Source of the DNA: Octopus sinensis
Taxonomy: Eukaryota
Reading direction: 5' to 3'
Length of the DNA stretch: 64,000 nucleotides
Assembly: GCF_006345805.1 (NCBI RefSeq)
Contig: NC_043006.1
Location: forward strand, 82,708,001 to 82,772,000
A program made the position numbers and the translations under genes. The notes under the pieces were generated by a model. That model had not been told where the DNA came from. It was given only the letters and a program-made list of their open reading frames with translations, and made no database searches. Positions 8,981-58,658 of this stretch are shown here, one piece after another. How positions within the stretch are numbered: position 1 is the stretch's first letter; each line of letters starts with the position of its first letter.

Positions 8981-9040
8981 ATTCTGAGCTGATGAGAGAA
9001 GGGTCGATTTTGGCTAATCTTGAAACGTACGTACTCAAAT
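8981..9040 (+). ncRNA. Minimal type I hammerhead ribozyme, array copy 1
   Basis: ATT(C)TGAG-CTGATGA-GAGA...TCTT-GAAA-C-GTAC-G-TA/CTCAAAT: 7-bp stem I with a bulged C, 4-bp stem II, palindromic stem III, GUA site. Confidence 0.8.
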
Positions 9041-9529: not shown

Positions 9530-9589
9530 ATTCTGAGCTGATGAGAGAAGGGTCGATTTTGGCTAATCTTGAAACGTACGTACTCAAAT
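9530..9589 (+). ncRNA. Hammerhead ribozyme, array copy 2
   Basis: Same motif; CTGATGA at 9538, cleavage after 9582. Confidence 0.8.
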
Positions 9590-10078
9590 AACCTTTGCAT
9601 TTGATTTTTTAATGTCTCTACCCTCATACTTTCTAGTTGAATTGAGCAAACACTATATGAGAGAGGTTTTCTTTAAGTGTTAGAAATAGTTTTTTTTTAG
9701 CTGCTATTTCTAACGAGTTCAGTATGCGGCAAAGTAATTTTTTACTAAGCCCTTTTATAAATGTAATAATTTGAATGTGCCTTAAATGGTCCCTTTGCAT
9801 ACTGAATACTTGGTGAAATTGATTAATTAATTAATTAATTTTACCCTCAATTGTTGAAATTATAATTCATCTCTCTCTACTTAATTGTCTCGGATTTTAC
9901 CGAAAAAAGCATAGTGTTTGCTGATTTTAACCCACGCTGGTGGAAAGGGGAGAGCAGAAATTTTTCTCTTGCATATTTGAGTTTGTTGGCACTGTTAGTT
10001 TGGAACAGATCTTCAGAAGCGATAACAAGCCGAAAGGGTATGCTCCCATTTTCAGTGTTTTCAAATTCAAACAAGGGC

Positions 10079-10138
10079 ATTCTGAGCTGATGAGAGAAGG
10101 GTCGATTTTGGCTAATCTTGAAACGTACGTACTCAAAT
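10079..10138 (+). ncRNA. Hammerhead ribozyme, array copy 3
   Basis: CTGATGA at 10087, cleavage after 10131. Confidence 0.8.
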
Positions 10139-10629
10139 AACCTTTGCATTTGATTTTTTAATGTCTCTACCCTCATACTTTCTTGAGTTGAATTGAGCAA
10201 ACACTATATGAGAGAGGTTTTCTTTAAGTGTTAGAAATAGTTTTTTTAGCTGCTATTTCTAACGAGTTCAGTATGCGGCAAAGTAATTTATTTTACTAAG
10301 CCCGTTTATATAATGTAATAATTTGAATTTGCCTTAAATGGTCCCTTTGCATACTGAATACTTGGTGAAATTGATTAATTAATTATTAATTTTACCCTCA
10401 ATTGTTGAAATTATAATTCATCTCTCTCTACTTAATTGTCTCGGATTTTACCGAAAAAAGCATAGTGTTTGCTGATTTTAACCCACGCTGGTGGAAAGGG
10501 GAGAGCAGAAATTTTTCTCTTGCATATTTGAGTTTGTTGGCACTGTTAGTTTGGAACAGATCTTCAGAAGCGATAACAAGCCGAAAGGGTATGCTCCCAT
10601 TTTCAGTGTTTTCAAATTCAAACAAGGGC

Positions 10630-10688
10630 ATTCTGAGCTGATGAGAGAAGGGTCGATTTTGCTAATCTTGAAACGTACGTACTCAAAT
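10630..10688 (+). ncRNA. Hammerhead ribozyme, array copy 4
   Basis: CTGATGA at 10638, cleavage after 10681. Confidence 0.8.
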
Positions 10689-11177
10689 AACCTTTGCATT
10701 TGATTTTTTAATGTCTCTACCCTCATACTTTCTGAGTTGAATTGAGCAAACACTATATGAGAGAGGTTTTCTTTAAGTGTTAGAAATAGTTTTTTTAGCT
10801 GCTATTTCTAACGAGTTCAGTATGCGGCAAAGTAATTTATTTTACTAAGCCCTTTTATATAATGTAATAATTTGAATTTGCCTTAAATGGTCCCTTTGCA
10901 TACTGAATACTTGGTGAAATTGATTAATTAATTAATTAATTTTACCCTCAATTGTTGAAATTATAATTCATCTCTCTCTACTTAATTGTCTCGGATTTTA
11001 CCGAAAAAAGCATAGTGTTTGCTGATTTTAACCCCCGCTGGTGGAAAGGGGAGAGCAGAAATTTTTCTCTTGCATATTTGAGTTTGTGGCACTGTTAGTT
11101 TGGAACAGATCTTCAGAAGCGATAACAAGCCGAAAGGGTATGCTCCCATTTTCAGTGTTTTCAATTCAAACAAGGGC

Positions 11178-11237
11178 ATTCTGAGCTGATGAGAGAAGGG
11201 TCGATTTTGGCTAATCTTGAAACGTACGTACTCAAAT
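11178..11237 (+). ncRNA. Hammerhead ribozyme, array copy 5
   Basis: CTGATGA at 11186, cleavage after 11230. Confidence 0.8.
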
Positions 11238-11726
11238 AACCTTTGCATTTGATTTTTTAATGTCTCTACCCTCATACTTTCTTGAGTTGAATTGAGCAAA
11301 CACTATATGAGAGAGGTTTTTTTAAGTGTTAGAAATAGTTTTTTAGCTGCTATTTCTAACGAGTTCAGTATGCGGCAAAGTAATTTATTTTACTAAGCCC
11401 TTTTATATAATGTAATAATTTGAATTTGCCTAAATGGTCCCTTTGCATACTGAATACTTGGTGAAATTGATTAATTAATTAATTAATTTTACCCTCAATT
11501 GTTGAAATTATAATTCATCTCTCTCTACTTAATTGTCTCGGATTTTACCGAAAAAAGCATAGTGTTTGCTGATTTTACCCCACGCTGGTGGAAAGGGGAG
11601 AGCAGAAATTTTTCTCTTGCATATTTGAGTTTGTTGGCACTGTTAGTTTGGAACAGATCTTCAGAAGCGATAACAAGCCGAAAGGGTATGCTCCCATTTT
11701 CAGTGTTTTCAAATTCAAACAAGGGC

Positions 11727-11786
11727 ATTCTGAGCTGATGAGAGAAGGGTCGATTTTGGCTAATCTTGAAACGTACGTACTCAAAT
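11727..11786 (+). ncRNA. Hammerhead ribozyme, array copy 6
   Basis: CTGATGA at 11735, cleavage after 11779. Confidence 0.8.
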
Positions 11787-12276
11787 AACCTTTGCATTTG
11801 ATTTTTTAATGTCTCTACCCTCATACTTTCTTGAGTTGAATTGAGCAAACACTATATGAGAGAGGTTTTCTTTAAGTGTTAGAAATAGTTTTTTTAGCTG
11901 CTATTTCTAACGAGTTCAGTATGCGGCAAAGTAATTTATTTTACTAAGCCTTTTATATAATGTAATAATTTGAATTTGCCTTAAATGGTCCCTTTGCATA
12001 CTGAATACTTGGTGAAATTGATTAATTAATTAATTAATTTTACCCTCAATTGTTGAAATTATAATTCATCTCTCTCTACTTAATTGTCTCGGATTTTACC
12101 GAAAAAAGCATAGTGTTTGCTGATTTTAACCCACGCTGGTGGAAAGGGGAGAGCAGAAATTTTTCTCTTGCATATTTGAGTTTGTGGCACTGTTAGTTTG
12201 GAACAGATCTTCAGAAGCGATAACAAGCCGAAAGGGTATGCTCCCATTTTCAGTGTTTTCAAATTCAAACAAGGGC

Positions 12277-12335
12277 ATTCTGAGCTGATGAGAGAAGGTC
12301 GATTTTGGCTAATCTTGAAACGTACGTACTCAAAT
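12277..12335 (+). ncRNA. Hammerhead ribozyme, array copy 7
   Basis: CTGATGA at 12285, cleavage after 12328. Confidence 0.8.
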
Positions 12336-12822
12336 AACCTTTGCATTTGATTTTTTATGTCTCTACCCTCATACTTTCTTGAGTTGAATTGAGCAAACAC
12401 TATATGAGAGAGGTTTTCTTTAAGTGTTAGAAATAGTTTTTTTAGCTGCTATTTCTAACGAGTTCAGTATGCGGCAAAGTAATTTATTTTACTAAGCCCT
12501 TTTATATAATGTAATAATTTGAATTTGCCTTAAATGGTCCCTTTGCATACTGAATACTTGGTGAATTGATTAATTAATTAATTAATTTTACCCTCAATTG
12601 TTGAAATTATTTCATCTCTCTCTACTTAATTGTCTCGGATTTTACCGAAAAAAGCATAGTGTTTGCTGATTTTAACCCACGCTGGTGGAAAGGGGAGAGC
12701 AGAAATTTTTCTCTTGCATATTTGAGTTTGTTGGCACTGTTAGTTTGGAACAGATCTCAGAAGCGATAACAAGCCGAAAGGGTATGCTCCCATTTTCAGT
12801 GTTTTCAAATTCAAACAAGGGC

Positions 12823-12882
12823 ATTCTGAGCTGATGAGAGAAGGGTCGATTTTGGCTAATCTTGAAACGTACGTACTCAAAT
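12823..12882 (+). ncRNA. Hammerhead ribozyme, array copy 8
   Basis: CTGATGA at 12831, cleavage after 12875. Confidence 0.8.
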
Positions 12883-13372
12883 AACCTTTGCATTTGATTT
12901 TTTAATGTCTCTACCCTCATACTTTCTTGAGTTGAATTGAGCAAACACTATATGAGAGAGGTTTTCTTTAAGTGTTAGAAATAGTTTTTTTAGCTGCTAT
13001 TTCTAACGAGTTCAGTATGCGGCAAAGTAATTTATTTTACTAAGCCCTTTTATATAATGTAATAATTTGAATTTGCCTTAAATGGTCCCTTTGCATACTG
13101 AATACTTGGTGAAATTGATTAATTAATTAATTAATTTTACCCTCAATTGTTGAAATTATAATTCATCTCTCTCTACTTAATTGTCTCGGATTTTACCGAA
13201 AAAAGCATAGTGTTTGCTGATTTTAACCCACGCTGGTGGAAAGGGGAGAGCAGAAATTTTTCTCTTGCATATTTGAGTTTGTTGGCACTGTTAGTTGGAA
13301 CAGATCTTCAGAAGCGATAACAAGCCGAAAGGTATGCTCCCATTTTCAGTGTTTTCAAATTCAAACAAGGGC

Positions 13373-13432
13373 ATTCTGAGCTGATGAGAGAAGGGTCGAT
13401 TTTGGCTAATCTTGAAACGTACGTACTCAAAT
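13373..13432 (+). ncRNA. Hammerhead ribozyme, array copy 9
   Basis: CTGATGA at 13381, cleavage after 13425. Confidence 0.8.
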
Positions 13433-13744
13433 AACCTTTGCATTTGATTTTTTAATGTCTCTACCCTCATACTTTCTGAGTTGAATTGAGCAAACACTAT
13501 ATGAGAGAGGTTTTCTTTAAGTGTTAGAAATAGTTTTTTTAGCTGCTATTTCTAACGAGTTCAGTATGCGGCAAAGTAATTTATTTTACTAAGCCCTTTT
13601 ATATAATGTAATAATTTGAATTTGCCTTAAATGGTCCCTTTGCATACTGAATACTTGGTGAAATTGATTAATTAATTAATTAATTTTACCCTCAATTGTT
13701 GAAATTATATATATATTTATATATATAATTTATTATATAGAAGG

Positions 13745-17344: not shown

Positions 17345-17391
17345 TATATATATATATATGTTATATATATATATATTATATATATATATAT

Positions 17392-18373
17392 TAAGCAATA
17401 AAGGGTTTAGCAACGAATTGCCTTACCACATACCGAATTTAGAAATACCAGTCAAAGAGTTATAGCTATTTCTTCTACTAAAAAGGGAGATCTCAGTAAA
17501 AACAGCAATTGGAAGGCAGACACAAACAGGTAAGAGAGAATGAATTGACGGCAATCTATCATACATTTTAAAGTTATCTACGGACGTACGTTTCGAAATC
17601 AAGTTTTTAGGAAAGCATAAGAATTAAATATTAAATATTAAATAATTCTATCTTACGATTGTGTCACCAGCCCCTTCCCACCCGCGTGTAGCCAAAACAA
17701 GATGCCGAAGACTACTTGGTGTAATTGATAATTATTCCAAATTAATTAATTTCACCCTTCATTATTACGGATAACCATATTTTATCTCAGTAGATGACCA
17801 CAGCATCTTGTTTTGGCTACACGCGGGTGGGAAGGGGCTGGTGACACAATCGTTTCATTCACATATTGAATTCGGTGATACTAGTTGCGGATTCTAGCTC
17901 GCTCTGATACTGAGTTGAGTTGGTGCCTTCTAGTATCTCAAAATTCAATATATAATCATTTATGATTATAGTATTCTACGCTGAAGAGAAAAGAAGTTTC
18001 GGTAAGATAGAATTATTTAATATTTAATATTTAATTCTTATGCTTTCCTAAAAACTTGATTTCGAAACGTACGTCCGTAGATAACTTAAAAATGTATGAT
18101 AGATTGCCGTCAATTCATTCTCTCTTACCTGTTTGTGTCTGCCTTCCAATTGCTGTTTTTACTGAGATCTCCTTTTTAGTAGAAGAAATAGCTATAACTC
18201 TTTGACTGGTATTTCTAAATTCGGTATGTGGTAAGGCAATTCGTTGCTAAACCCTTTATTGCTTAGTATTACTTAAATTTTCCTCGAATGAGGCTTTTAC
18301 ATGCCGAAGACTACTTGGTGTAATTGATAATTATTCCAAATTAATTAATTTCACCCTTCATTATTACGGATAT
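17392..18373. mobile_element. PLE-type terminal-repeat remnant with nested inverted and direct repeats
   Basis: Outer inverted repeats 17392-17656/18002-18265, inner inverted repeats 17656-17705/17803-17852, direct repeats 17702-17773/18301-18372. Contains a hammerhead and partly resembles the 549-bp unit. Confidence 0.8.
17975..18081 (+). ncRNA. Type I hammerhead ribozyme with a long stem II insertion
   Basis: TCTACG/CGTAGA stem I (6 bp), CTGAAGA, GAAA/TTTC stem II closing about 68 nt, then GAAA-C-GTAC-G-TC. GUC cleavage after 18075. Confidence 0.78.
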
Positions 18374-18916: not shown

Positions 18917-19078
18917 TGTAACTTATTCACAAAACTGCATTGAGATCGTAAAATCCAGCAGACCGTATCAATGTTATAAATCTTAGTACTTGCCCGATCT
19001 TAAAATGTCTACATTTAGAAAAGACAGTTTATATTAAAAAGAAACAAATTAATTCAGTTCAATTAAGAAGCATGAGTA

Positions 19079-19156
<78 letters not shown>

Positions 19157-19398
19157 GAGTGTATTTTACCTTGTTAACAATTAACAATATATATATATAT
19201 ACGTACAGGCTTCTTTCAATTTCTGCTATGAAATATATTTGTATGTAAGGATATATGTGAGTGTGTAAGAATGGACATAATATTTTTATTTTTAAATTTA
19301 GATTTTTATTTTATTTTTTCCATTTTCTTTCTCATTCTAAGGGACACCCATTATATCCACAATAAGTTCCTCCGTATACATACATACATATATATATA

Positions 19399-19439
<41 letters not shown>

Positions 19440-19484
19440 TGTGTGTGTGTGTGTGTATTTATATGTATATATTTGCATGTAAGG

Positions 19485-19526
<42 letters not shown>

Positions 19527-19765
19527 ATAGCAACACGTCTACTATTGAAAAACAAATCCTCTTTTTCCTTCTCCCTTTCTATTTCTTACAAAGCTCATTT
19601 AAAAAGTACAAAAGGACACAAAAGGAAAAGACCCACATTTTTAACCCCCCCCCCCAATATTCTCTCCCTTTCATCTCCTCCATCCCTCAATTTCTACCAC
19701 GCAATGGGACGGAACCTAAAACATGTGCTGGGAAGCACACTTACACACAGCCACGTCTGCGACTA

Positions 19766-19851
<86 letters not shown>

Positions 19852-19883
19852 TTTGTGTGTGTGTGCCTATTTAAATATACTAC

Positions 19884-20017
19884 GGGCTTTTTTCAGTTTC
19901 TGTCAAGACCTTTGTCGGCCCAAGTCTATAGCTGAAGACACTTGCCCAAGGTGCCACGCAGTGGGACTGAACCCTGAAACATGTGGTTGGGAAGTAAGTT
20001 TCGTACCACTCATCCAC
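19884..20017 (-). mobile_element. tRNA-derived SINE fragment
   Basis: GAAGACACTTGCCCAAGGTGCCACGCAGTGGGACTGAACC core; same family as 54121. Confidence 0.75.
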
Positions 20018-20026
20018 GTCTGCGAC

Positions 20027-20059
<33 letters not shown>

Positions 20060-20213
20060 ATGTGCGTGCGTGTGTTTATGTGTGTACACTGATGGATTCG
20101 AGGGTTTCGTTTAATTAAAAGTTGATTTCTTAATTTCTCCGGAGTATAAATACCTATAATAGCCATACTTAAAAAGAAACAAATTAATTCAGTTCAATTA
20201 AGAAGCATGAGTA

Positions 20214-20279
<66 letters not shown>

Positions 20280-20515
20280 GAGTGTATTTTACCTTGTTAA
20301 CAATTAACAATATATATATATACGTACAGGCTTCTTTCAATTTCTGCTATGAAATATATTTGTATGTAAGGATATATGTGAGTGTGTAAGAAATGGACAT
20401 AATATTTTTATTTTTAAATTTAGATTTTTATTTTATTTTTTCCATTTTCTTTCTCATTCTAAGGGACACCCATTATATCCACAATAAGTTCCTCCGTATA
20501 CATACATACATATAT

Positions 20516-20552
<37 letters not shown>

Positions 20553-20599
20553 GAGTGTGTGTGGTGTGTGTATTTATATGTATATATTTGCATGTAAGG

Positions 20600-20641
<42 letters not shown>

Positions 20642-20932
20642 ATAGCAACACGTCTACTATTGAAAAACAAATCCTCTTTTTCCTTCTCCCTTTCTATTTC
20701 TTACAAAGCTCATTTAAAAAGTACAAAAGGACACAAAAGGAAAAGACCCACATTTTTAACCCCCCCCCCCAATATTCTCTCCCTTTCATCTCCTCCATCC
20801 CTCAATTTCTACCACGCAATGGGACGGAACCTAAAACATGTGCTGGGAAGCACACTTACACACAGCCACGTCTGCGACTATGTGTGTGTGTGTGTGTGTG
20901 TGCGTGTGTGTGTGTGTTTGTGTGTGTGTGTT

Positions 20933-20975
<43 letters not shown>

Positions 20976-20992
20976 CTATTTAAATATACTAC

Positions 20993-21126
20993 GGGCTTTT
21001 TTCAGTTTCTGTCAAGACCTTTGTCGGCCCAAGTCTATAGCTGAAGACACTTGCCCAAGGTGCCACGCAGTGGGACTGAACCCTGAAACATGTGGTTGGG
21101 AAGTAAGTTTCGTACCACTCATCCAC
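20993..21126 (-). mobile_element. tRNA-derived SINE fragment (duplicate)
   Basis: Copy of 19884-20017 within the tandem duplication. Confidence 0.75.
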
Positions 21127-21135
21127 GTCTGCGAC

Positions 21136-21168
<33 letters not shown>

Positions 21169-21499
21169 GTATGTGCGTGCGTGTGTTTATGTGTGTACAC
21201 TGATGGATTCGAGGGTTTCGTTTAATTAAAAGTTGATTTCTTAATTTCTCCGGAGTATAAATACCTATAATAGCCATACTTAAAAAGAAACAAATTAATT
21301 CAGTTCAATTAAGAAGCATGAGTAAACAACATATTGTAAGCCACATTATAAATTGCGAAAATGTTTATTTGCGCCCTGCCGATGTCATTTTTTTTTTCAT
21401 TGTTTCATTTAAAAAATATGTTATTACCTCTCTTAGACTTCAGATGTTTTCATTTCAAACTATTTTCTAGGGCTTCGAAACTACTACCGTAGCCCTCCA

Positions 21500-35575: not shown

Positions 35576-35596
35576 TAATAACAATAACAACAACAA

Positions 35597-35911
35597 CTTT
35601 CAAAATACAAAGACCTGGAAATAGAGGTAACCAGAATGTGGAATCTAAAAGCAGAAACAATTCCTATCATAGTAGGTGCATTAGGCATGATAAAAAAAAT
35701 ATTCAGACAAATACATAACAAAAACACCAGGAATTACAAACACATATACCATAGAAAAAATTGCACTACTAGGCACTGCACATATCCTACGCAGAACACT
35801 TTCCATACAATAACCATCAGAGCATCACAACAAATCACAGCCCATACCCAAGGCACACAGAGCTGCGCTCGGTAGTGGAGTAAAGGCACGCTATAAAACT
35901 AAAACTACTGA
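35597..35911 (+). mobile_element. R4/Dong LINE 3'-end fragment in (AAT)n
   Basis: Near-identical to 47905-48219. Confidence 0.9.
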
Positions 35912-35997
35912 ACGACAATTATAATAACAACAACAACAACAACAAAAACTACAACAACAACGACAACAACAAGGACAATTATAATAATAATTTCTTC

Positions 35998-37427
35998 TAT
36001 AGGCAAAAGGCCTGAAATTTAAGAGGTGGGGTCTATTACATCGACCCATGTACGCAATGGACACTGATATCCTCAGCCGAAAGGATGAAATGCGAAGTAG
36101 ACCTCAGTGGAATTTGAATTCAGAACGTAAAAGCGGGAGAAGTACTGCAAAGAATTTTACCCAGTGTGCTAATGTTTTTGTTGCAGTCTCAAGTGCTCAA
36201 TTGCCATATATATCATTTATTTTAATTTAATCCCCATCTCAGATCCTAGTGTCATAAAGCTGGCATGAAATAAAATTTAACATAATGAGCTGCAGGGTGT
36301 TACATATGTAGTTACTTCAATCATTATCTTACGGGTTGTGAAAATGAACCAGACTGCCTACCTGCCTCTTTTCTCTTTCCTATCCCCAACATGTTCACTA
36401 ACTGCTCTGTAAGCTATAAATCTTTTGAACGCCTTACGCACTAGCTAACCATTTAATGTCTTTCTAGCTTTGCTATGTTCTCTCATTCAAAGCTAGCCTC
36501 AGCTGGAATCAGCTTCGGCTGGCCCACTGTGGTGAAATGTTGTTCATATATTGTTTGAAATGTTATGCATCACCTAATGAAAGCGTTTCTTTTTGTTATG
36601 ATACAATGTACTTATTAATCCATTAAAGATATCCGCAGGAAATAGCTGTAATGAAGTGACGCGTATCCATCGTTTTGTTAATTTTTTGTTCATAATGCAC
36701 CTCATTGGTATTCCGACCCGTCTGGAGTATACCAAATACTGTACGACCAATATAATGTAGAGTTTTTGGTTTGGCCATTAGGCAATTAAAATACTCATGA
36801 GGTTTAAATTCTCTATATATATAACCTGAATATTTCTGGATGTACTTCTGTACCTATGATATTTATTCGACTTAAGGGGCTGTTTCCAAATTAATTCGAC
36901 CCTACCTGATAACTATAATTTAAGTTCCAGATTCTTTTCAATCTTTAATATCGTATATATATATATATGTATATATTTATGTGTCTGTGTTTTTGTGTCT
37001 CCTACAGAAAATTGCAGGAAGTGAACAATGGCCACTGGTAGGTGAAAATACTTTCTTTGACCGCGTGGTTGGACAGGAAATAGATGGTGACAGTGCATCT
37101 GTGTAGGGTAGGGAATCATTGTGGCTTGTGAGCATATGAGCTTGTGTGCACGTGTGCGCGTGTATTTGTGAGTGTGTGGCTGGGTGTATATTTATAAGTA
37201 GGTTTCTGTGCGTGTGATGGCTACTCAACCTGAATAAAATTCTAACTGGGCTTCACTTGCATGGTCATGCGCTGTTTAACTTGACATGAGATCATCATGT
37301 CGCGCACATGTAGCTGTGATACATGTGCTTGGAGTATCCTCATTGGACGGGTAGTCATGATGGGTGTACTGGGTCCGTATATTTGTACCCCAGTGTCATT
37401 TTGATGACACACTCTGCTCTCTCACTC
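35998..37427. repeat. Triplicated block, copy A (SINE remnant + ~1.1 kb non-TE sequence + repeat X)
   Basis: Colinear with 42149-43583 and 48279-49490. Confidence 0.92.
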
Positions 37428-37459
<32 letters not shown>

Positions 37460-37469
37460 TAATAATAAT

Positions 37470-37719
37470 TGTGTTGTGAACGATGAAAGAGGACAACAGA
37501 AAAAAGGGAGAATGGAAATACAATCGGGCCTTACCTCGTCGAAGATTATTTCGGATCCCTCTCAGCCAACTCGATACGTCTCGTACCTTCGTTGTCTCTA
37601 CAGCAACTCGTCGATCCCACACGTGCGTCCTCCCTGCTGCTTCCGCTTCCTGCCGCGCATGCGCTCTGCAAGCCTTACTTCCGCCCTCCCCTATCTGTCA
37701 TCCTCTCACGAACACCACA
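37470..37719 (-). repeat. 3' LTR
   Basis: Direct repeat of 41419-41665. Confidence 0.95.
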
Positions 37720-37733
37720 CGCCCCCCTGATCT
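37720..37733 (-). other. Polypurine tract
   Basis: Minus strand AGATCAGGGGGGCG abuts the 3' LTR. Confidence 0.7.
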
Positions 37734-37755
37734 ACAGATCACTGAACCGGCTTTC

Positions 37756-40669
37756 TCACTCGCTCCCGCACCTGAAACTGGTTTCATAATCAGCCAACCA
37801 GGGAGGAGGGTGCCGTACCCTCTGTGGTCGCTGTGCGACCCTAGGACTTGTTCCTGGTGTGTTGCTGATGGCCTCGTCATCCTGTTTGTTGTTTTCGTCT
37901 TGCCCACTGCTGCTGGTCCCATCCTCTGGGGCATGGACAATCCTCCGTATATCCAAAACGTGGCGTGGCATACCATCGACCGAGGTGTTATGTTTTTGAA
38001 TTTACAGAGGTTATTGTCCCCTTTCCCCATTGCGATGTACACCGCGCGTTTGGGGGTTTTACCCAGACTTCCTCCCCGACCTGCACGAAAGCGTGCTCTT
38101 CCTCTGCCCCGGGTCGCATTGATGTAGTACACGGATGCCTCCACTCGTACCTGAATATTGCCCTGTGTGGCACCGACTCCTCAGCCTGTCCTCATCTGGG
38201 CGACATATTGTACCAAAATACGGCCTCAACTGGTGGAATGTGACCCCTCTCTGACATGGCCTTGATGGTACGACGATGCCTTTCCACCACCCCATTTCCA
38301 CTTGGCCGGTATGCCGCCCTGAAGAAGCGGTTGACCTTCCACTCATCAAGCATTTCTCTCAGCACATCCGAGCGAAATGCAGTGCCGTTGTCCAGAAGCA
38401 GTTCATCTACGGGGCCTCGTTCCAGGAATATCTCATTCAACACTTTCACAATTTCTTCTGCGGTCCCCGACTTCATCTCCCTCCATATGGCCAACCGCCC
38501 CGGTCCGCAGTCAACCATTGAGAGGTATGTCCCCTGCCGGTAGTGTGTTATGTCCACCGCCAGTCGTTTCCAGTCCTGATCCACTGGAATACTTCCCGCC
38601 TCATGCACAACCGGAGCAGGGTCGATGGACTGGCACCTGTCAGAACTGCTAACCACTCTTTGCACGCTCTGTCTTGTTACGTCGGAGTCAACTTTTCTGG
38701 CTAGGAACAATGTCCTGTCCACACCCATGTGATGCATGGTGTGCAGTCTCCGCAATTCCGAGTCGCTCAGACGGCATACTGCAGCTACAGCCTGCTTCGC
38801 ATCCTCTGGCACCTGCAACCAGGCTCGCTTTACCCTGGTCAGGACGTCTGCCCTGTTCTTCTCGGAAGGCACAAAGATCACGCTCAGCTTCAGATTGAAC
38901 TCAGTAGTTAGTTCACGCAGTATTCCTAATCGACGCTTTACCAGCATCTCTGCAGCCCCTTTGGTCCGCACCCTCCGCTCATCGGTGATGACTGCTGTCG
39001 CCCAACCAAGTACTGTGGCCGAATCAGTCCTGATTTCTATGGTGTGCAACCCCCACTTCAAGGCTAGGTTCACCCCCTTCAACACGGCATCCAACTCCGC
39101 CACGTTGATATGATTGCAGTCATCCGTCTTCCTGAGCCAGGCTGCATCTTCCACCGTGACACCTCCCACTTCTAAGACAACCCCTATTGCGATGCTACTG
39201 GCATCACAACATACGATCCCGCTCTTTGATTTGGGAACATACCAGCTGCCCCTCACTGGGTCCTCTGCTCCTACTCTGACCAAGACTTCCTGCATCATGT
39301 CGATTGTCCTCTCCCCCACTCTGTCATTCCACTTCACTCCTTCGGCTCGTCTCTTGGTGAAGCTACATGCTGTCCGGAGCCAACCTGCAATCGGGTAGTG
39401 TCCCACCAGCTTCCCACACACAGAGAACAGTTCCCGTCTACTCATGCTGGCGCCCAGTTCAGGGACGTCATTCCCTCGCCGGAACCACAACGCGCCGGCC
39501 TTGTCTTTCCATAGCTTGAGGCCCAGTGCAGCACCTCCCTCCATTGCCTCTGGCGGCTTGGCGATCAGTCCAAAACTCTTCAGATGGCCTATGACCTCCG
39601 TTGCTGGTATCACGGTTTCATCCACCAGAATGTCATCGATGTATGAATTGGTGGCCCTTTTTACTCTGTCCATCTTCCCCAGGATGGCCTTGAGAATTGT
39701 TGCCATAATCTTTGGCGCTGAATTCAGCCCGAATCCCAACCTGGTCAGACAGTACGTCCGGCCCCTATACCTGACGAGCTGGTACTTCCATAATTTCTCA
39801 GCCACATGCACCTGTAGGTATGCCGACTTCAAATCAACAATCATGGAGGCCCCCGTCGTCTGCCTCCACTCTCGCAAGGTGTCTCCGCAGACATCCGTGG
39901 CCTCGCCGCCTGTATGACACGACACGTGGTCATTCAGCTCTCGGAAGTCAAGCACTGGCCTGACCTTATGCTTTGTGGGCTGTATCACCGCCATGAGTGG
40001 CAGGACTCTGCTGTCTTCTTTTTCCCAAGGGATCAATATGCCCTCCTTAATCCACCGCTCCACCTCCCCCTCGAACTCACTTCTGGCATCTCCTTTTAGA
40101 GTATGCTGATAGCAGCCCACTTTATTCTTTAACATCGGGGGCTCTCCCTTCCAGTGCCACTCCACTGTCCACCTCTTGCCATCAAAGACAGCCCGAAAAT
40201 CCTGGTCTTCAATGGTGTGTGCCACATCCTTTTCCTCACGGTTGTCGCCGGTGCACGGTCTCGCCCTACACGGTTTCCCCGCTAACCCAAAGGTTACACC
40301 AGCCTCGTTAACGGTGACACCCCCCAAGCGGGTGATTGCATCCATCCCCATCACCACGTCAATCTCGTCCACCAAGTGACCAACCACAATCTCTCGCAAC
40401 GTCAGCTGTAGTCCCTGCACTAGAATCTGCGCATCCGTAACCCCTTCGCAGTGTACTTCTCTTCCGTCGACAGCCCTAACACTGCTTCCTCCACTCCATG
40501 TCTCTTCCACTTCTGTAGTCATCAGGGTCGTTGTACAGCCCGTGTCCACCAGGGCTCGTGACATCTTCCCCTTCACTAGAATGTCGACCACAGGTAGCGA
40601 TGATAAACGCGCCACTACTGATCTAAAGGGACAACTACCAGCGCAGTAGTCTCCCGCAGTCCGTTTCCC
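37756..40669 (-). pseudogene. pol: protease, RT, RNase H, integrase
   Basis: LVDTGC, VRPVLDFRELN, DLKSAYLQ, YIDD, CDASS...HINVAELDAV...TDS, HHMGVDRT, LAVDI, DNGTAF, GVVER. A premature TGA at 38192 and a frameshift near 37985 disrupt the integrase C-terminus. Confidence 0.92.
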
Positions 40670-41376
40670 CGCAGACACTCGCTGGCTACCTGCCCCGGCT
40701 CTCGACACCGGTAGCAAATCAGCTCAGGCTTGGGCGACACGCAGTCACGCACCATGTGTGGACCTTGGCACCGGAAACACTGTCCTTTGAACGGTCGCAC
40801 ACGTTCTTTCTTCAGCCCCTCTCCGCTGCTCCTAGCTGGGCCACTTTTCGACGTTGCAGTCGCTGCTACCGACGTCATCATGCTGCACGAAACTAGTACA
40901 CGTGCCCGAGATATGATGTCAGCCATCGGCATCGAATGCACGTTCTGGAGCTTCTGTAGCTCGACCGACATGATGTCGGGAAAACCGGTCACGAACGCCA
41001 ACCTAACCGTCCGTTCCAGCGACTCTCCCTCGTAACCCGCCAATTTAGCCAGTCTTCTAAGCTCATTGGTAAACACGTCCACCTGTTGCCCAGTCCATCT
41101 CATTCTACCCAGGCGAGCGCATGCCTCGAACATTCCCTCCGCTAAGGCCTCCATCAGTCGGATTTCTACTTTCACCGCGCTAAGTTGGTCCGTCTCCTCC
41201 ATCTCTAAATATAACGCCAACGCCGGGCCATCCAAGTACAGCAGCATGAAGCTCGCCAGGTCACCTATACCATGGAGCTTCGCCACCAACTTCACTCTCT
41301 TCAACCAAGTGACCACATCTGTGTCGCCGCAAAACGGTGTAATAAGTTCGTGCGAAACCCGAGCACTCTGCATCAT
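40615..41376 (-). CDS. gag (253 aa) with zinc knuckles
   Basis: Open ORF with CFRCQGPHMVRDC and a degenerate CYRCREPGQVASEC. Confidence 0.9.
   Translation of the reverse strand: MMQSARVSHELITPFCGDTDVVTWLKRVKLVAKLHGIGDLASFMLLYLDGPALALYLEMEETDQLSAVKVEIRLMEALAEGMFEACARLGRMRWTGQQVDVFTNELRRLAKLAGYEGESLERTVRLAFVTGFPDIMSVELQKLQNVHSMPMADIISRARVLVSCSMMTSVAATATSKSGPARSSGEGLKKERVRPFKGQCFRCQGPHMVRDCVSPKPELICYRCREPGQVASECLRGNGLRETTALVVVPLDQ
40628..40669 (-). other. Putative -1 ribosomal frameshift signal (G GGA AAC plus downstream hairpin)
   Basis: Heptamer 40663-40669 is in gag codon phase, and pol is in the -1 frame. A 7-nt spacer is followed by a GGGA-g-ACTAC...GTAGT-tg-TCCC hairpin. Confidence 0.75.
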
Positions 41377-41406: not shown

Positions 41407-41418
41407 GCCGAAATAGCT
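41407..41418 (-). other. Atypical primer-binding site complementary to tRNA-Phe nt 1-12
   Basis: Plus strand GCCGAAATAGCT equals the 5' end of eukaryotic tRNA-Phe(GAA) and is flush with the 5' LTR. Confidence 0.75.
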
Positions 41419-41665
41419 TGTGGTGTGAACGATGAAAGAGGACAACAGAAATAAGGGAGAATGGAAATACAATCGGGCCTACCTCGACGAAGATTAGTTC
41501 GGATCCCTCTCAGCCAACTCGATACGTCTCGTGCCTTCGTCGTCTCTACAGCAACTCATCGATCCCACACGTGCGTCCTCCCTGCCGCTTCCGCTTCCTG
41601 CCGCGCATGCGCCCAGAAGCCCTACTTCCGCCCTCCCCTTCTGTCATCCTCTCAACAACACCACA
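41419..41665 (-). repeat. 5' LTR
   Basis: Direct repeat of 37470-37719. Confidence 0.95.
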
Positions 41666-41704
41666 ATAATAATGATAATAATAATATAATAATAATAATA
41701 ATAA

Positions 41705-41735
<31 letters not shown>

Positions 41736-41752
41736 AAGAAGAAGAAAGAGAA

Positions 41753-42133
41753 AAAGATGGTATTGGCACACATCAGAAAAGGTCACAGAAAACGAGAAAG
41801 ACCATACTCTGGGATATTCCGATACACACAGAGGAGAAATTAAGGCCAACAGACCAGATATAGTTGTCAGAGATCATGAAGAAAAAAATGCTTTCTAATT
41901 GATGTATCAATACCGGCAGGTGACAACGTGTCTCTAAAAGAAATAGAGAAACTTTCAAAATACAAAGACCTGGAAATAGAGGTAACCAGAATGTGGAATC
42001 TAAAAGCAGAAACAATTCCTATCATAGTAGGTGCATTAGGCATGATAAAAAAATTCAGACAAATACATAACAAAAACTACAGGACTTACAAACACATATG
42101 ACATAGAGAAAATTGCACTACTAGGCACTGCAT
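41753..42133 (+). mobile_element. R4/Dong LINE 3' fragment
   Basis: KRWYWHT...RPDIVVRDHEEK; same (GAA)n 5' junction as the copy at 43843. Confidence 0.9.
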
Positions 42134-42148
42134 ATATATATATATATG

Positions 42149-43583
42149 TATAGGCAAAAGGCCTGAAATTTAAGAAAATTACATCGACCCCTGTACGCAA
42201 TTGACACTGATTTCCTCAGCCGAAAGGATGAAATGCGAAGTAGACCTCAGTGGAATTTCAATTCAGAACGTAAAAGCGGGAGAAATACTGCAAAGAATTT
42301 TACCCAGTGTGCTAATGTTTTTGTTGCAGTCTCAAATGCTCAATTCCCATATATATCATTTATTTTAATTTAATCCCCATCTCAGATCCTAGTGTCATAA
42401 ATCTGGCATGAAATAAAATTTAACATAATGAACTGCAGGGAGTTACATATGTAGTTAATTCAATCATTATCTTACGGGTTGTGAAAATGAACCAGACTGC
42501 CTACCTGCCTCTTTTCTCTTTCCTATCCCCAACATGTTCACTAACTGCCCTGTAAGCTATAAATCTTTTGAACGCCTTACGCACTAGCTAACCATATAAT
42601 GTCTTTCTAGCTTTGCTATGTTCTCTCATTCAAAGCTAGCCTCAGCTGGAATCAGCTTCGGCTGGCCCACTGTGGTGAAATGTTGTTCATATATTGTTTG
42701 AAATGTTATGCATCACCTAATGAAAGCGTTTCTTTTTGTTATGATACAATGTACTTATTAATCCATTAAAGATATCCGCAGGAAACAGCTGTAATGAAGT
42801 GGCGCGTATCCATCGTTTTGTTAATTTTTTGTTCATAATGCACCTCATTGGAATTCCGACCCGTCTGGAGTATACCAAATACTGTACGACCAATATAATG
42901 TAGAGTATTTGGTTTGGCCATTAGGCTATTAGAATACTCATGAGGTTTAAATTCTCTCTATATATAACCTGAATATTTCTGGATGTACTTCTGTACCCAT
43001 GATATTTATTCGACTTAAGTGGCTGCTTACAAATCAATTCGACCCAACCTGATATCTATAATTTAAGTACCCGATTCTTTCCAATCTTTAATATCGTATA
43101 TATATATATATATGTATTTATTTATGTGTCTGTGTTTTTGTGTCTCCTCAGGCTGATGTACAGAAAATTGCAGGAAGTACAGTATTACCAGTGGTAGGTG
43201 AAAAGAATTTCTTTGACCGCGTGGTTGGACAGGAAATAGATGGCGACAGTGCATCTGTATTGGGTAGGGAATCATTGGGGCTTGTGAGCATATGAGCTTG
43301 TGTGCACGTATGCCCGTGCACATGTGAGTGTGTGGGTGGGTGTATATTTATAAGTAGGTTTTTGTGCTTGTGATGGCTACTCAACCTGAATAAAATTCTA
43401 ACTGGGCTTCACTTGCATGGTCATGCGCTGTTTAACTTGACATGAGATCATCATGTCGCACACATGTAGCTGTGATACATGTGCTTGGAGTATCCTCATT
43501 GGACGGGTAGTCATGATGGGTGTACTGGGTCCGTATATTTGTACCCCAGTCTCACTTTGATGACACACTCTGCTCTCTAACTC
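42149..43583. repeat. Triplicated block, copy B
   Basis: Colinear with copies A and C. Confidence 0.92.
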
Positions 43584-43638
43584 AATAATAATAATAATAA
43601 TAATGATAATAATAAAAATGATAAGGATAATAATAATA

Positions 43639-43683
<45 letters not shown>

Positions 43684-43753
43684 TAATAATAATAATAACA
43701 ACAACAACAACAATAATAATAATAATGATAATAATAATAACAACAACAACAAC

Positions 43754-43834
<81 letters not shown>

Positions 43835-43842
43835 AAGAAGAA

Positions 43843-44358
43843 AAAAGATGGTATTGGCACACACGAGAAAAGGTCAAAGAAAACGAGAAAGCAACCATAC
43901 TCTGGGATATGACGATATACACAGAGGAGAAATTAAGGCCAACAGACCAGATATAGTTGTCAGAGATCATGAAGAAAAAAAAATGCTTTCTAATTGATGT
44001 ATCAATACCGGCAGGTGACAACGTGTCTCTAAAAGAAATGGAGAAACTTTCAAAATACAAAGACCTGGAAATAGAGGTAACCAGAATGTGGAATCTAAAA
44101 GCAGAAACAATTCCTATCATGGTAGGTGCATCAGGCATGATAAAAAATATTCAGACAAATACATAACAAAAACACCAGGTTTTACAAACACATGCCATAG
44201 AGAAAATTGCACTACTAGGCACAGCACACATCCTACGCAGAACACTTTCCATACAATAACCATCAGAGCATCACAACAAATCACAGCACATACCAAAGGC
44301 ACACAGAGCTGCGCTCGGTAGTGAAGTCAAAGCACGCTATAAAAATAAAACTACTGAA
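43843..44358 (+). mobile_element. R4/Dong LINE 3' fragment
   Basis: RLE region plus 3' UTR, followed by (TAA)n. Confidence 0.9.
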
Positions 44359-44360
44359 TG

Positions 44361-44432
<72 letters not shown>

Positions 44433-47400: not shown

Positions 47401-48219
47401 TAAACTAAACGCAAAAGAAATAGACAAAGAAAAATCCCAGCAATGGTTGAGAAGCTCAGGACTCAAAGCAGTGACAGAGGGATTTTTAATTGCAACACAA
47501 GACCAAAGCCTCCCCACCAGAAATTACCAAAAACATGTAAGGAAAAGTAACTGCAGAATATGTGGAGATGGACAAGAAACAATAAATCATATTATCTCTA
47601 GCTGCCCAGTCCTGGCTAAGAAGGAATATATTCACAGACATGACAGAGTTGGAACCTACATACATTGGAAGCTATGCCAACATTATGGAATGACAACAGA
47701 AAAAAGATGGTATAGGCACACACCAGAAAAGGTCACAGAAAACGAGAAAGCAACCATACTCTGGGATATGCCGATACACACAGATAGAGAAATTAAGGCC
47801 AACAGACCAGATATAGTTGTCAGAGATCATGAAGAAAAAAAATGCTTTCTAATTGATGTATCAATACCGGCAGATGACGATGTGCCTCTAAAAGAAATGG
47901 AGAAACTCTCAAAATACACAGACCTGGAAATAGAGGTAACTAGAATGTGGAATCTGAAAACAGAAACAATTCCTATCATAGTAGGTGCATTAGGCATGAT
48001 AAAAAAATATTCAGACAAATACATAACAAAAACACCAGGACTTACAAACACATATAACATACAGAAAATTGCACTACTAGGCACTGCACACATCCTACGC
48101 AGAACACTTTCCATACAATAACCATCAGAGCATCACAACAAATCACAGCACATACCCAAGGCACACAGAGCTGCGCTCGGTAGTGAAGTCAAAGCACGCT
48201 ATAAAAATAAAACTACTGA
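44441..48219 (+). mobile_element. Near full-length R4/Dong-clade RLE LINE inserted in (TAA)n
   Basis: ORF pieces 44525-44983, 45134-46162 and 46199-48121: RKWTRGE, NYRPITCL, WIDYQKAFDS, GIFQGDTLSP, YMDD, CRICGDGQETINHIISSC, RPDIVV...IDVSIP. Two frameshifts, a TGA at 46160, and a (TAA)n tail. Confidence 0.93.
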
Positions 48220-48278
48220 ATAATAATAATAACAACAACAACAACAACAACAACAATAATTATAATAATAATTACTAC

Positions 48279-49490
48279 TATAGGCAAAAGGCCTGAAATT
48301 ACATCGACCCCTGTACGCATTTGACACTGATATCCTCAGCCGAAGAGATGAAATGCGAAGTAGACCTCAGTGGAATTTGAATTCAGAACGTAAAAGCGGG
48401 AGAAGTACTGGAAAGAATGTTACCCAGTGTGCTAATGCTTTTGTTGCAGTCTCAAGTGCTTAATTCCCATATATATCATTTATTTTAATTTAATCCCCAT
48501 CTCAGATCCTAGTGTCATAAATCTGGCATGAAATAAAATTTAACATAATGAACTGCAGGGAGTTACATATGTAGTTAATTCAATCATTATCTTACGGGTT
48601 GTGAAAATGAACCAGACTGCCTACCTGCCTCTTTTCTCTTTCCTATCCCCAACATGTTCACTAACTGCCCTGTAAGCTATAAATCTTTTGAACGCCTTAC
48701 GCACTAGCTAACCATTTAATGTCTTTCTAGCTTTGCTATGTTCTCTCATTCAAAGCTAGCCTCAGCTGGAATCAGCTTCGGCTGGCCCACTGTGGTGAAA
48801 TGTTGTTCATATATTGTTTGAAATGTTATGCATCACCTAATGAAAGCGTTTCTTTTTGTTATGATACAATGTACTAATTAATCCATTAAAGATATCCGCA
48901 GGAAACAGCTGTAATGAAGTGGCGCGTATCCATCGTTTTGTTAATTTTTTGTTCATAATGCACCTCATTGGAATTCCGACCCGTCTGGAGTATACCAAAT
49001 ACTGTACGACCAATATAATGTAGAGCTTTGGTTTGGCCATTATGCTATTAAAATACTCATGAGGTTTAAATTCTCTATATATATAACCTGAATATTTCTG
49101 GATGTACTTCTGTACCCATGATATTTATTCGACTTAAGGGGCTGTTTACAAATTAATTCGACCCAACCTGATATCTATAATTTAAGTACCCAATTCTTTT
49201 CAATCTTTAATATCGTATATATATATATATGTATATATTTATGTGTTTGTGTTTTTGTGTCTCCTCAGGCTGGTGTACAGAAAATTGCAAGAAGTGCAGT
49301 AATGCCAGTGGTAGGTGAAAAGAATTTCTTTGACCGCGTGGTTGGACAGGAAATAGATGGCGACAGTGCGTCTGGGTAGGGTAGGGAATCATTGTTGTTT
49401 GTGAGCATATGAGCTTGTGTGCACGTGTGCCCGTGCACATGTGAGTGTGTGGTTGGGTGTATATTTGCAAGTAGGTTTCTGTGCGTGTGT
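48279..49490. repeat. Triplicated block, copy C (lacks repeat X)
   Basis: Colinear with copies A and B. Confidence 0.92.
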
Positions 49491-57896: not shown

Positions 57897-58003
57897 GTAA
57901 GCACTGGTTTACTGTAGTAATAACAGCAGTAGCAGCAGTAGTCCTAGCTGCATCATCATCAGCATTATTATTATTGTTGTTGTTGTTGTTGTTTTTGTTG
58001 TTT

Positions 58004-58038
<35 letters not shown>

Positions 58039-58039
58039 A

Positions 58040-58354
58040 TTCAGTAGTTTTATTTTTATATTGTGCTTTCACTTCACTATCGAGCGCAGCTCTATGTGCC
58101 TTGGATATGTGCTGTGGTTTGTTGTGATGCTCTTATGGTAATTGTATTGAGAGTGTTGTGTGTAGGATGTGTGCAGTGCCCAGTAGTGACATTTTCTGTA
58201 TGTTATATATATTTATAAGTCCTGGTGACTTTGTTATGTATTTATCTGAATGCACCTACAATGATAGGAATCGTTTCTGTTTTTAGATTCCACATTCGAG
58301 TTACCTCTATTTCTAGGACTTTGTATTTTGAAAGTTTCTCCATTTCTTTTAGAG
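58040..58354 (-). mobile_element. R4/Dong LINE 3'-end fragment in an intronic (TTG/TTA)n tract
   Basis: Reverse complement of 47900-48219, diverged. Confidence 0.85.
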
Positions 58355-58658
58355 ATCTTTTCGGTTTGAACGGCAGTTTTTTCTAGCGGTGTCATATGAA
58401 ATTGTCACCCATAATTATGACCCTAGTATCGATCTATTGCATTTCAATCTGTTTTAGGGTTAGGGCTAGTTAGGGGTAGGGGGAAGAGTATCTTTTTTTC
58501 TTCACAAATGTAAATAAACCCAATCTTTTTCATAAACGAGGGAATATTCATACAGCACAGAATGTTTTTTAACTCAATAGACGTCAGTGATTTGTTGAAA
58601 TTGCAGAAATTTCTTGTATTAACAAAATTATTTTTAACATGCTTTGTTGTCTTCACAG

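What the first reader, a model, noticed from the sequence alone, without database searches (positions are those of the whole stretch)
41407..41418. LTR retrotransposon primer site matches the 5' end (nt 1-12) of tRNA-Phe, not a tRNA 3' CCA end
Seen: on the coding (minus) strand the 5' LTR ends ...CACCACA and is followed directly by AGCTATTTCGGC, with no TGG. Its complement GCCGAAATAGCT is the first 12 nt of the conserved eukaryotic tRNA-Phe(GAA), GCCGAAATAGCTCAG. The geometry places a 3'-OH at tRNA nt 10-12 next to U5, as minus-strand priming requires. Established: most LTR elements prime from the tRNA 3' end, copia/Ty5 use an internal tRNAi-Met half, and Tf1 uses an 11-nt self-primer released by its own RNase H. 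Inference: this lineage may prime with a very short 5' tRNA fragment, possibly cut by its own RNase H in a Tf1-like way in trans. I do not know of a described case.
Basis: partly seen in the sequence, partly recalled or inferred. Interest (0 to 1): 0.85.

Follow-up and report, generated by a model that had tools for sequence, protein, structure and literature searches.

The report
Retrotransposon primed by tRNA 5' end
A defective LTR retrotransposon in this window belongs to a large, widespread and apparently undescribed lineage whose primer site pairs with the first 12 bases of tRNA-Phe rather than the tRNA's 3' end, which would be a third exception to the textbook way these elements start DNA synthesis.

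Summary
On the minus strand the 5' LTR (41665..41419, TG...CA) is followed directly by AGCTATTTCGGC (41418..41407). This is the exact complement of nt 1-12 of metazoan tRNA-Phe. There is no TGG.

It is a lineage trait, not chance. In 33 distinct relatives (pol identity 33-64%; a cephalopod, a crab, a mantis shrimp and many metagenome contigs) the LTR end ACA is always followed at once by AGCTA + 7 nt. Six variants occur, all fitting GCC-NNNN-TAGCT. Only tRNA positions 4-7 vary. Flanks are unconserved (about 0.2 bits against 1.7 bits).

No complement of the site lies in the LTRs, so Tf1-type self-priming is excluded.

A sister lineage (35% identical PR-RT-RNase H, same DUF7047 domain) carries the canonical site TGGTGCCGAAACCCGGGA for the 3' end of the same tRNA-Phe. 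The window's lineage therefore appears to have switched from the 3' to the 5' end of its primer tRNA.

The likely mechanism is a 12-nt 5' fragment of tRNA-Phe with its 3'-OH at U12. How it is cut is untested. Ten literature searches found no prior description. The window copy is old and broken.

The parts
41666..41670 (.). Target-site duplication, 5' side (ATTAT on the element strand)
   Evidence: The same 5 nt lie at 37465-37469. The site is inside an (AAT)n microsatellite, so it is weak on its own. Relatives have clear 5-bp duplications.
41419..41665 (-). 5' LTR (TGTGGTG...CACCACA)
   Evidence: 93.6% identical to the 3' LTR, with terminal inverted repeat TG..CA.
41407..41418 (-). Primer binding site AGCTATTTCGGC, complementary to tRNA-Phe nt 1-12, directly abutting the LTR
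   Evidence: Conserved in 33 relatives.
40615..41376 (-). gag ORF (253 aa). Its ATG lies 30 nt after the primer site. The zinc knuckle is degenerate here.
   Evidence: Relatives' gag proteins carry CCHC knuckles.
37768..40717 (-). pol (protease, RT, DUF7047, RNase H of PF00075/PF13456 type, integrase). It is broken by an in-frame stop at about 38192 and a frameshift at about 37993.
37722..37741 (-). Small hairpin TGATCTGTAGATCA followed by the polypurine tract AGGGGGG, 2 nt before the 3' LTR
   Evidence: The same GATC-N4-GATCA + G-run is seen in L017, L054, L055 and L056.
37470..37719 (-). 3' LTR
37465..37469 (.). Target-site duplication, 3' side
43450..43950 (+). Paralogous empty site: the same host repeat unit without the element
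   Evidence: the joined flanks of the element align across it.

Best explanation
The feature is the minus-strand primer binding site of an old, defective LTR retrotransposon. The element belongs to a large lineage with gag, then pol in the order protease-RT-DUF7047-RNase H-integrase. Elements are about 4.2 kb and make 5-bp target duplications.

Shown: in this lineage the site is 12 nt long, abuts U5 without a spacer, and is complementary to nt 1-12 of tRNA-Phe (7 nt of acceptor stem, U8, A9, and G10-U12 of the D stem).

Inferred: tRNA-Phe anneals to the genomic RNA through its 5' strand, helped by the zinc-knuckle gag protein. It is cut between nt 12 and 13. The resulting 12-nt RNA, with its 3'-OH at U12, primes minus-strand strong-stop DNA into U5. 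Plus-strand strong-stop synthesis then copies the primer to its natural 5' end (tRNA nt 1). This explains why complementarity ends exactly there and why the site is always 12 nt.

Inferred, less firmly: the cut is made by the element's own RT/RNase H, either at the edge of the RNA-RNA duplex as in Tf1 or measured from the recessed RNA 5' end.

Inferred: the lineage descends from elements that used the 3' end of the same tRNA. The new site could have arisen when plus-strand synthesis read through the whole primer tRNA. Such a copy ends in ...CTGAGCTATTTCGGC. An internal deletion would then leave the 12-mer next to U5.
For: The tRNA-Phe 5' sequence in Drosophila and human comes.

Family-wide conservation: 33 distinct elements at 33-64% pol identity carry ACA|AGCTA+7 nt, 0-30 nt before the gag ATG (62 nt in L001), with no TGG site. 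The site forms an information island of 1.72 bits against 0.15-0.20 bits in the flanks.

The variation fits a tRNA. GCC (nt 1-3) and TAGCT (nt 8-12) are invariant, and only acceptor-stem positions 4-7 vary, in six variants. The base after the site varies freely.

Variants do not simply follow the pol tree, as expected if each element matches its host's tRNA.

There is no complement of the site in the LTRs at up to 3 mismatches, apart from one 3-mismatch chance-level match in L001, and none anywhere else in the window.

The sister lineage (35% identity over 689 aa, E 2e-109; same DUF7047 and RNase H families) has TGGTGCCGAAACCCGGGA 3-6 nt after its LTR. This is the published complement of the tRNA-Phe 3' end.

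The 12-bp duplexes are predicted at -19 to -24 kcal/mol.
Against: No experimental data exist. No primer, cut site or nuclease has been observed.

The host tRNA-Phe genes could not be read for the window's species or for any host. For the five non-GCCGAAA variants the tRNA identity is unknown. The crab and mantis-shrimp elements have GCCTAGATAGCT, whereas Drosophila tRNA-Phe has GCCGAAATAGCT. Either malacostracan tRNA-Phe differs or another tRNA is used there.

In phage genomes the motif GCCNNNATAGCTCAGTTGGGAGAGC belongs to Thr, Val and Phe tRNAs, so the motif alone does not identify Phe.

A 12-nt tRNA fragment ending inside the D stem is not a known abundant tRNA fragment class (my recollection: the shortest 5' fragments are 14-16 nt).

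The window copy itself is dead. Its site is therefore a fossil of the family trait.
Confidence: 0.75

Rival explanations
1. Tf1-type self-priming. The 12-mer pairs with the 5' end of the element's own transcript, which folds back and is cut by RNase H. The resemblance to tRNA-Phe would be secondary.
For: The primer length is similar (11 nt in Tf1, from established knowledge). The site abuts U5 and there is no TGG.
Against: The complement of the site is absent from the LTRs of the 8 elements tested whose LTR ends were resolved, allowing up to 3 mismatches. The only hit is one 3-mismatch chance-level match in L001. It is also absent from the rest of the window. Self-priming would not hold GCC...TAGCT fixed across elements whose LTRs are otherwise unalignable. 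It would not explain the sister lineage's canonical tRNA-Phe site either.
Confidence: 0.03
2. The primer is a 5' fragment of a tRNA or tRNA-like RNA other than tRNA-Phe. Candidates include a Lys-type tRNA sharing GCC...TAGCT, or a tRNA-derived SINE transcript. This could apply at least to the hosts with variant sites.
For: Five of the six variants do not match the Drosophila/human tRNA-Phe. The motif is not Phe-specific in phages.
Against: The window and 12 other elements match metazoan tRNA-Phe 12 of 12. The sister lineage uses the tRNA-Phe 3' end. Position 7 is A in 32 of 33 elements and nt 8-12 never vary, as expected for a single tRNA family.
Confidence: 0.12
3. The 12-mer is conserved for another reason, for example as a packaging, dimerisation or translation signal, or as a target of host 5' tRNA fragments. 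Priming would occur elsewhere or by another route.
For: The site lies only 0-30 nt from the gag ATG in most elements, so a translational role is conceivable. AGCT is palindromic.
Against: No other candidate primer site exists between the LTR and gag. Zero spacing from the LTR end is the position required for the second strand transfer. The complementarity ends exactly at tRNA nt 1.
Confidence: 0.07
4. Chance resemblance in a decayed element.
For: The copy is old (LTRs 93.6% identical) and its pol is broken. With one mismatch allowed, a 12-mer turns up somewhere in 12 of 100 shuffles of the window.
Against: The same site sits at the same place in 33 independent elements, including young copies with identical LTRs (L001, L054).
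Confidence: 0.01

Closest known systems
Tf1/Tf2 self-priming (Schizosaccharomyces pombe; Levin 1995, cited in PMC7472051)
   Same: The primer is very short (11 nt against 12 nt) and taken from the 5' terminus of an RNA. It must be released by an endonucleolytic cut at the end of an RNA-RNA duplex. The site abuts U5. The primer's natural 5' end would define the length of the site.
   Different: In Tf1 the primer is the element's own transcript, acting in cis. Here no complement exists in the LTR and the sequence is that of a host tRNA, acting in trans. No close relationship of the proteins to Tf1 was shown.
Half-tRNA priming of copia, 1731 and Ty5 (genus Hemivirus), and the internal tRNA-Arg/tRNAi-Met sites of Candida elements (PMC4139406)
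   Same: A host tRNA is used through a part other than its 3' CCA end. It must therefore be cleaved to give a 3'-OH, and the primer is a 5' portion of the tRNA.
   Different: [quoted passage not shown] Here the site pairs with nt 1-12 of tRNA-Phe, so the cut falls in the D stem. Those elements are Ty1/copia; this one has the order PR-RT-RH-IN.
Canonical 3'-end tRNA-Phe priming, as in the sister lineage found here (L075-L077)
   Same: The same tRNA species is indicated. The protein architecture is the same (DUF7047 between RT and a PF00075-type RNase H), with 35% identity over PR-RT-RH.
   Different: The sister lineage has an 18-nt TGG... site 3-6 nt after the LTR, needs no cleavage, encodes a fused gag-pol of about 1400 aa, makes 4-bp target duplications and has a different integrase.

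Membership tests
LTR retrotransposon (general) | Two direct LTRs ending TG...CA, flanked by a short target-site duplication | tested here: met
   Empty paralogous site. Clear 5-bp duplications in relatives L001, L054, L055 and L056.
LTR retrotransposon (general) | gag plus pol with protease, RT, RNase H and integrase; polypurine tract before the 3' LTR | tested here: met
   pol is interrupted by one stop and one frameshift.
Ty3/gypsy (Metaviridae) in the narrow sense | Domain order PR-RT-RH-IN | tested here: met
Ty3/gypsy (Metaviridae) in the narrow sense | Gypsy-type RT/RNase H (Pfam RT_RNaseH PF17917/PF17919) and clear RT similarity | tested here: not met
   RNase H matches PF00075/PF13456 instead. 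RVT_1 falls below its cut-off. No Ty3 RT appears among the listed PDB matches, and the only RT match listed is HIV-2 RT at 1.7e-5. Ordinary gypsy proteins are only 25-28% identical to the sister-lineage pol P0304 over about 20% of its length. No formal phylogeny against reference clades was made.
BEL/Pao | Pao-type peptidase A17 and DUF1759/DUF1758/DUF5641 domains | tested here: not met
   None of these was found.
Tf1-type self-priming elements | Primer site complementary to the first nucleotides of the element's own transcript (inside the LTR) | tested here: not met
   no complement in the LTRs at up to 3 mismatches (one 3-mismatch chance-level hit in L001); none elsewhere in the window.
Tf1-type self-priming elements | Primer released by the element's RNase H | not testable with these tools
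   Needs biochemistry.
Half-tRNA priming (Hemivirus: copia, Ty5) | [quoted passage not shown] | tested here: not met
   The site matches tRNA-Phe nt 1-12. The order is PR-RT-RH-IN.
Canonical tRNA 3'-end priming | Site begins TGG and is complementary to the 3' terminal 10-18 nt of a tRNA | tested here: not met
   No TGG site in the window element or in any of 33 relatives. It is met in the sister lineage only.
Proposed kind: tRNA 5'-end priming | Site abuts U5 and is complementary to tRNA nt 1-12, ending exactly at nt 1; conserved across the lineage | tested here: met
Proposed kind: tRNA 5'-end priming | Each host's tRNA-Phe begins with the variant carried by its elements | not testable with these tools
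Only Drosophila and human sequences came from papers.
Proposed kind: tRNA 5'-end priming | A 12-nt tRNA fragment is found joined to minus-strand strong-stop DNA | not testable with these tools
   Needs experiments.

The most novel reading that the evidence does not exclude
A large, old and still active lineage of animal-associated LTR retroelements has replaced the universal 3'-CCA-end tRNA primer with a 12-nt piece cut from the 5' end of the same tRNA-Phe. The lineage comprises at least about 1,300 protein clusters at 50% identity and includes elements in cephalopods and malacostracan crustaceans. This would be a third non-canonical way of starting reverse transcription, beside half-tRNA priming and Tf1 self-priming. 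It implies a site-specific cut in the D stem of a host tRNA, probably by the element's RT/RNase H. It also predicts that 5' tRNA fragments could prime or inhibit retroelements in these animals.
Probability: 0.65. Interest if true: 0.85.

Novelty: new variant of a known kind. Interest (0 to 1): 0.8.

Why it matters
Initiation of reverse transcription from the 3' end of a host tRNA is one of the most constant features of retroviruses and LTR retrotransposons. Only two exceptions are established: half-tRNA priming and Tf1 self-priming.

A whole lineage that uses the opposite end of the tRNA would add a third solution. It comes with a natural before-and-after pair, because the sister lineage uses the 3' end of the same tRNA. 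That pair makes the evolution of primer choice directly testable.

It also has a practical consequence. Annotation tools for LTR elements look for sites complementary to tRNA 3' ends. They will report these abundant marine-invertebrate elements as lacking a primer site.

Finally, it raises the question of whether 5' tRNA fragments interact with retroelements, as 3' fragments are known to do.

Tried and rejected
(1) Self-priming. I searched each LTR for the complement of its own site and found nothing meaningful.

(2) Host tRNA genes. ARAGORN found no tRNA in the window. In 16 related loci it found only a tRNA-Val next to the Oratosquilla element. The host tRNA-Phe could therefore not be read.

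(3) Viral-contig scan for GCCNNNATAGCTCAGTTGGGAGAGC, to learn which tRNAs carry the variants. It returned only phage tRNA clusters in which the motif belongs to Thr, Val or Phe tRNAs. This says nothing about eukaryotic hosts, but it warns that the motif alone is not Phe-specific.

(4) Literature. Ten full-text searches were run, including searches for the literal site strings, DUF7047, and 'complementary to the 5' combined with PBS and tRNA. None found a description of this site or this family. The strings occur only as tRNA-Phe probes. One review was not held. Older subscription literature and Repbase notes could not be searched.

(5) Naming the clade. PDB searches by sequence and by profile showed only general retroviral-type integrase similarity and a weak HIV-2 RT match. 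No clade name could be assigned.

(6) A second conserved box for tRNA contacts near the site. The conservation profile shows none within 25 nt on either side.

(7) Named hosts. A second protein search with a distant member yielded none.

Full report
THE OBSERVATION

Read on the minus strand, the sequence is ...TCGTTCACACCACA AGCTATTTCGGC ATATAAAC..., with the 12-mer at 41418..41407. A second copy of the preceding roughly 248 nt lies at 37719..37470. The two copies start TGTGGTG, end CACCACA / CAACACA, and are 93.6% identical.

Each end is flanked by ATTAT. The insertion sits in an (AAT)n microsatellite, so this duplication alone is weak evidence. However, the element interrupts one unit of a repeat of about 2.1 kb. 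The joined flanks align cleanly with an uninterrupted unit at 43450-43950, so the boundaries hold.

Between the LTRs lie three things:
- a 253-aa gag ORF (41376..40615);
- a pol with protease, RT, DUF7047 (PF23088), an RNase H of the PF00075/PF13456 type, and integrase;
- a G-rich polypurine tract 2 nt before the 3' LTR.

pol has an in-frame stop near 38192 and a frameshift near 37993. This is an old, dead copy.

No TGG follows the LTR. The complement of the 12-mer, GCCGAAATAGCT, is the start of tRNA-Phe. The Drosophila 5' probe GCTCTCCCAACTGAGCTATTTCGGC and the human primer GCCGAAATAGCTCAGTTGGGAG both show this. Pairing stops exactly at nt 12 on the LTR side and at nt 1 on the other side.

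IS IT MORE THAN CHANCE?

The window alone cannot answer this. With one mismatch allowed, such a 12-mer appears somewhere in 12 of 100 shuffles. The relatives answer it.

The pol protein has 713 relatives in the protein collection. A profile search finds 1,285 clusters at E <= 1e-30. I collected DNA for the Argonauta hians, Petrolisthes manimaculis and Oratosquilla oratoria copies, for several ENA/Logan contigs and for 51 metagenome loci.

Every locus that includes the leader has the LTR end ACA followed at once by AGCTA plus 7 nt, usually 0-30 nt before the gag ATG. L001 and L068-70 differ slightly: their LTRs end in AAG and AGA. This makes 33 distinct elements at 33-64% pol identity, plus one (L031) with a 1-nt deletion in the site.

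Written as the complement (the tRNA sense), the variants are:
- GCCGAAATAGCT: 13 elements
- GCCGCGATAGCT: 8
- GCCGTGATAGCT: 6
- GCCTAGATAGCT: 3, including both crustaceans
- GCCGGGATAGCT: 2
- GCCGTGTTAGCT: 1

Anchored on the site, the three LTR-end bases and the 12-mer carry 1.7 bits per position. The 22 bases upstream carry 0.20 bits and the 25 downstream 0.15 bits. Young copies with identical LTRs and clear 5-bp duplications show the same arrangement: L001 (TCAGT), L054 (TAAAC), L055 (CAGAA) and L056 (TTTAG). None of these elements has a TGG-type site.

WHAT THE SITE PAIRS WITH

The invariant parts are GCC (tRNA nt 1-3) and TAGCT (nt 8-12). All variation lies in acceptor-stem positions 4-7. 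The base following the site is free. This is what a tRNA 5' end looks like when compared across hosts.

The variants do not simply follow the pol tree. GCCGAAA occurs in two separate clades, and sister elements can differ in variant (a rough neighbour-joining tree). This fits matching to host tRNAs.

Tf1-type self-priming was tested. The complement of each site is absent from that element's LTR at up to 3 mismatches, except for one chance-level 3-mismatch hit in L001. The window holds no other copy on either strand.

The most telling result came from a more distant branch. Proteins such as P0304, P0358 and P0359 are fused gag-pol proteins of about 1400 aa. They are 35% identical to the window's PR-RT-RNase H over 689 aa and share the DUF7047 and RNase H families. 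They sit in elements L075-L077, whose LTRs are followed after 3-6 nt by TGGTGCCGAAACCCGGGA.

That string is the published capture oligonucleotide for the 3' end of tRNA-Phe. The sister lineage therefore primes from tRNA-Phe in the ordinary way. Independent evidence thus points to tRNA-Phe as the partner of the window's lineage. The polarity of change is most simply read as a switch from the 3' end to the 5' end.

MECHANISM

Shown: the position, length, complementarity and conservation of the site, and the lack of any alternative site.

Inferred: tRNA-Phe anneals by its 5' strand. Relatives' gag proteins carry CCHC knuckles that could unwind it. The 12-bp duplexes are predicted at -19 to -24 kcal/mol.

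The tRNA is then cut between nt 12 and 13, and the 12-nt RNA primes synthesis into U5. Later, plus-strand strong-stop synthesis runs to the 5' end of the primer. This accounts for a site that is always 12 nt long and ends at tRNA nt 1, with no need for a modified base to stop the polymerase.

Who makes the cut is unknown. By analogy with Tf1 (established: its RNase H cuts after nt 11 of the paired self-primer), and with 5'-end-directed RNase H cleavage in retroviruses, I favour the element's own RT/RNase H. I put this at about even odds against a host nuclease.

An origin scenario follows from the geometry. If plus-strand synthesis reads through the whole primer tRNA, the copy ends in ...CTGAGCTATTTCGGC. 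A deletion between U5 and this end would create the present arrangement. This is speculation and no intermediates were found.

WEAK POINTS

No host tRNA-Phe gene could be read. The crustacean variant GCCTAGATAGCT differs from Drosophila tRNA-Phe at two positions. Either malacostracan tRNA-Phe differs or another tRNA is used there. In phages the wider motif belongs to Thr, Val and Phe tRNAs, so the motif alone does not prove Phe. Nothing here is experimental.

COMPARISON WITH KNOWN SYSTEMS

The site works like Tf1 in primer size and in the need for a cut, and like copia/Ty5 in using a cleaved host tRNA. It fails the defining feature of each. There is no self-complement, and the pairing is not with the anticodon stem-loop of tRNAi-Met.

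The proteins have the gypsy-like domain order. They lack the gypsy-type RNase H families and show only weak RT similarity to solved structures. Ordinary gypsy proteins are the next hits to the sister-lineage pol P0304, at 25-28% identity over a fifth of its length. I could not assign a named clade.

Ten literature searches found no description of the site or the family. A review of Candida elements lists internal tRNA-Arg and tRNAi-Met sites, but none at a tRNA 5' end. Subscription-only literature and Repbase were out of reach, so prior description cannot be excluded.

VERDICT

The feature is a family-wide, apparently undescribed variant of tRNA priming. The copy in the window is a fossil of it.

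A NOTE ON HANDLING

For repeat detection, my scripts read the window slice and the fetched loci as they were. They printed only boundary stretches.

Noticed in passing
window 35595-37468 + 41666-42132; 42149-44432; 47698-49489; inverted partial copy 57964-58355: The LTR element interrupts one unit of a repeat of about 2.1 kb. Each unit carries (AAT)n and (GAA)n microsatellites, and copies are 92-96% identical. The uninterrupted unit served as the empty site.
   Followed up: partly
window 8849-13709: Tandem array with a period of about 550 bp, roughly 9 units, 98% identical (a ladder of self-matches). It looks like a satellite.
   Followed up: no
window 1735-3935 versus 27301-25903: Two stretches 80-84% identical in inverted orientation, about 22-25 kb apart. 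Also a tandem duplication of about 1.1 kb at 19031-21334 and a short inverted repeat at 17388-18269.
   Followed up: no
L055 1595-1667 (Oratosquilla oratoria): A tRNA-Val(CAC) gene lies 196 nt upstream of the element's 5' LTR. This is a single case. Whether the lineage targets pol III genes, as Ty3 does, was not examined.
   Followed up: no
window 37728-37741; L017, L054, L055, L056 just before the 3' LTR: A small conserved hairpin, TGATC-N4-GATCA, lies immediately upstream of the G-rich polypurine tract. Its function is unknown. It may define the plus-strand primer.
   Followed up: partly
L075-L077 versus L001, L054-L056: The sister lineage with the canonical tRNA-Phe site makes 4-bp target duplications (GGAC, AGTG, TCAC). 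Its integrase is barely alignable to that of the window's lineage, which makes 5-bp duplications.
   Followed up: partly
L072 (JGI contig Ga0620608_0013891): Two element copies lie head to tail sharing one LTR (gag-pol, LTR, gag-pol). This is either a tandem element array or an assembly of circular or concatemeric forms. Many relatives come as contigs of about 4 kb with terminal overlaps (L004, L019), which also suggests circular or collapsed assemblies.
   Followed up: no
L001 2973-2988 (Argonauta hians): This LTR ends in AAG instead of ACA, so pairing with tRNA-Phe could extend to nt 13 (C13:G). L068-L070 LTRs end in AGA. The terminal CA is therefore not absolutely fixed in the lineage.
   Followed up: no
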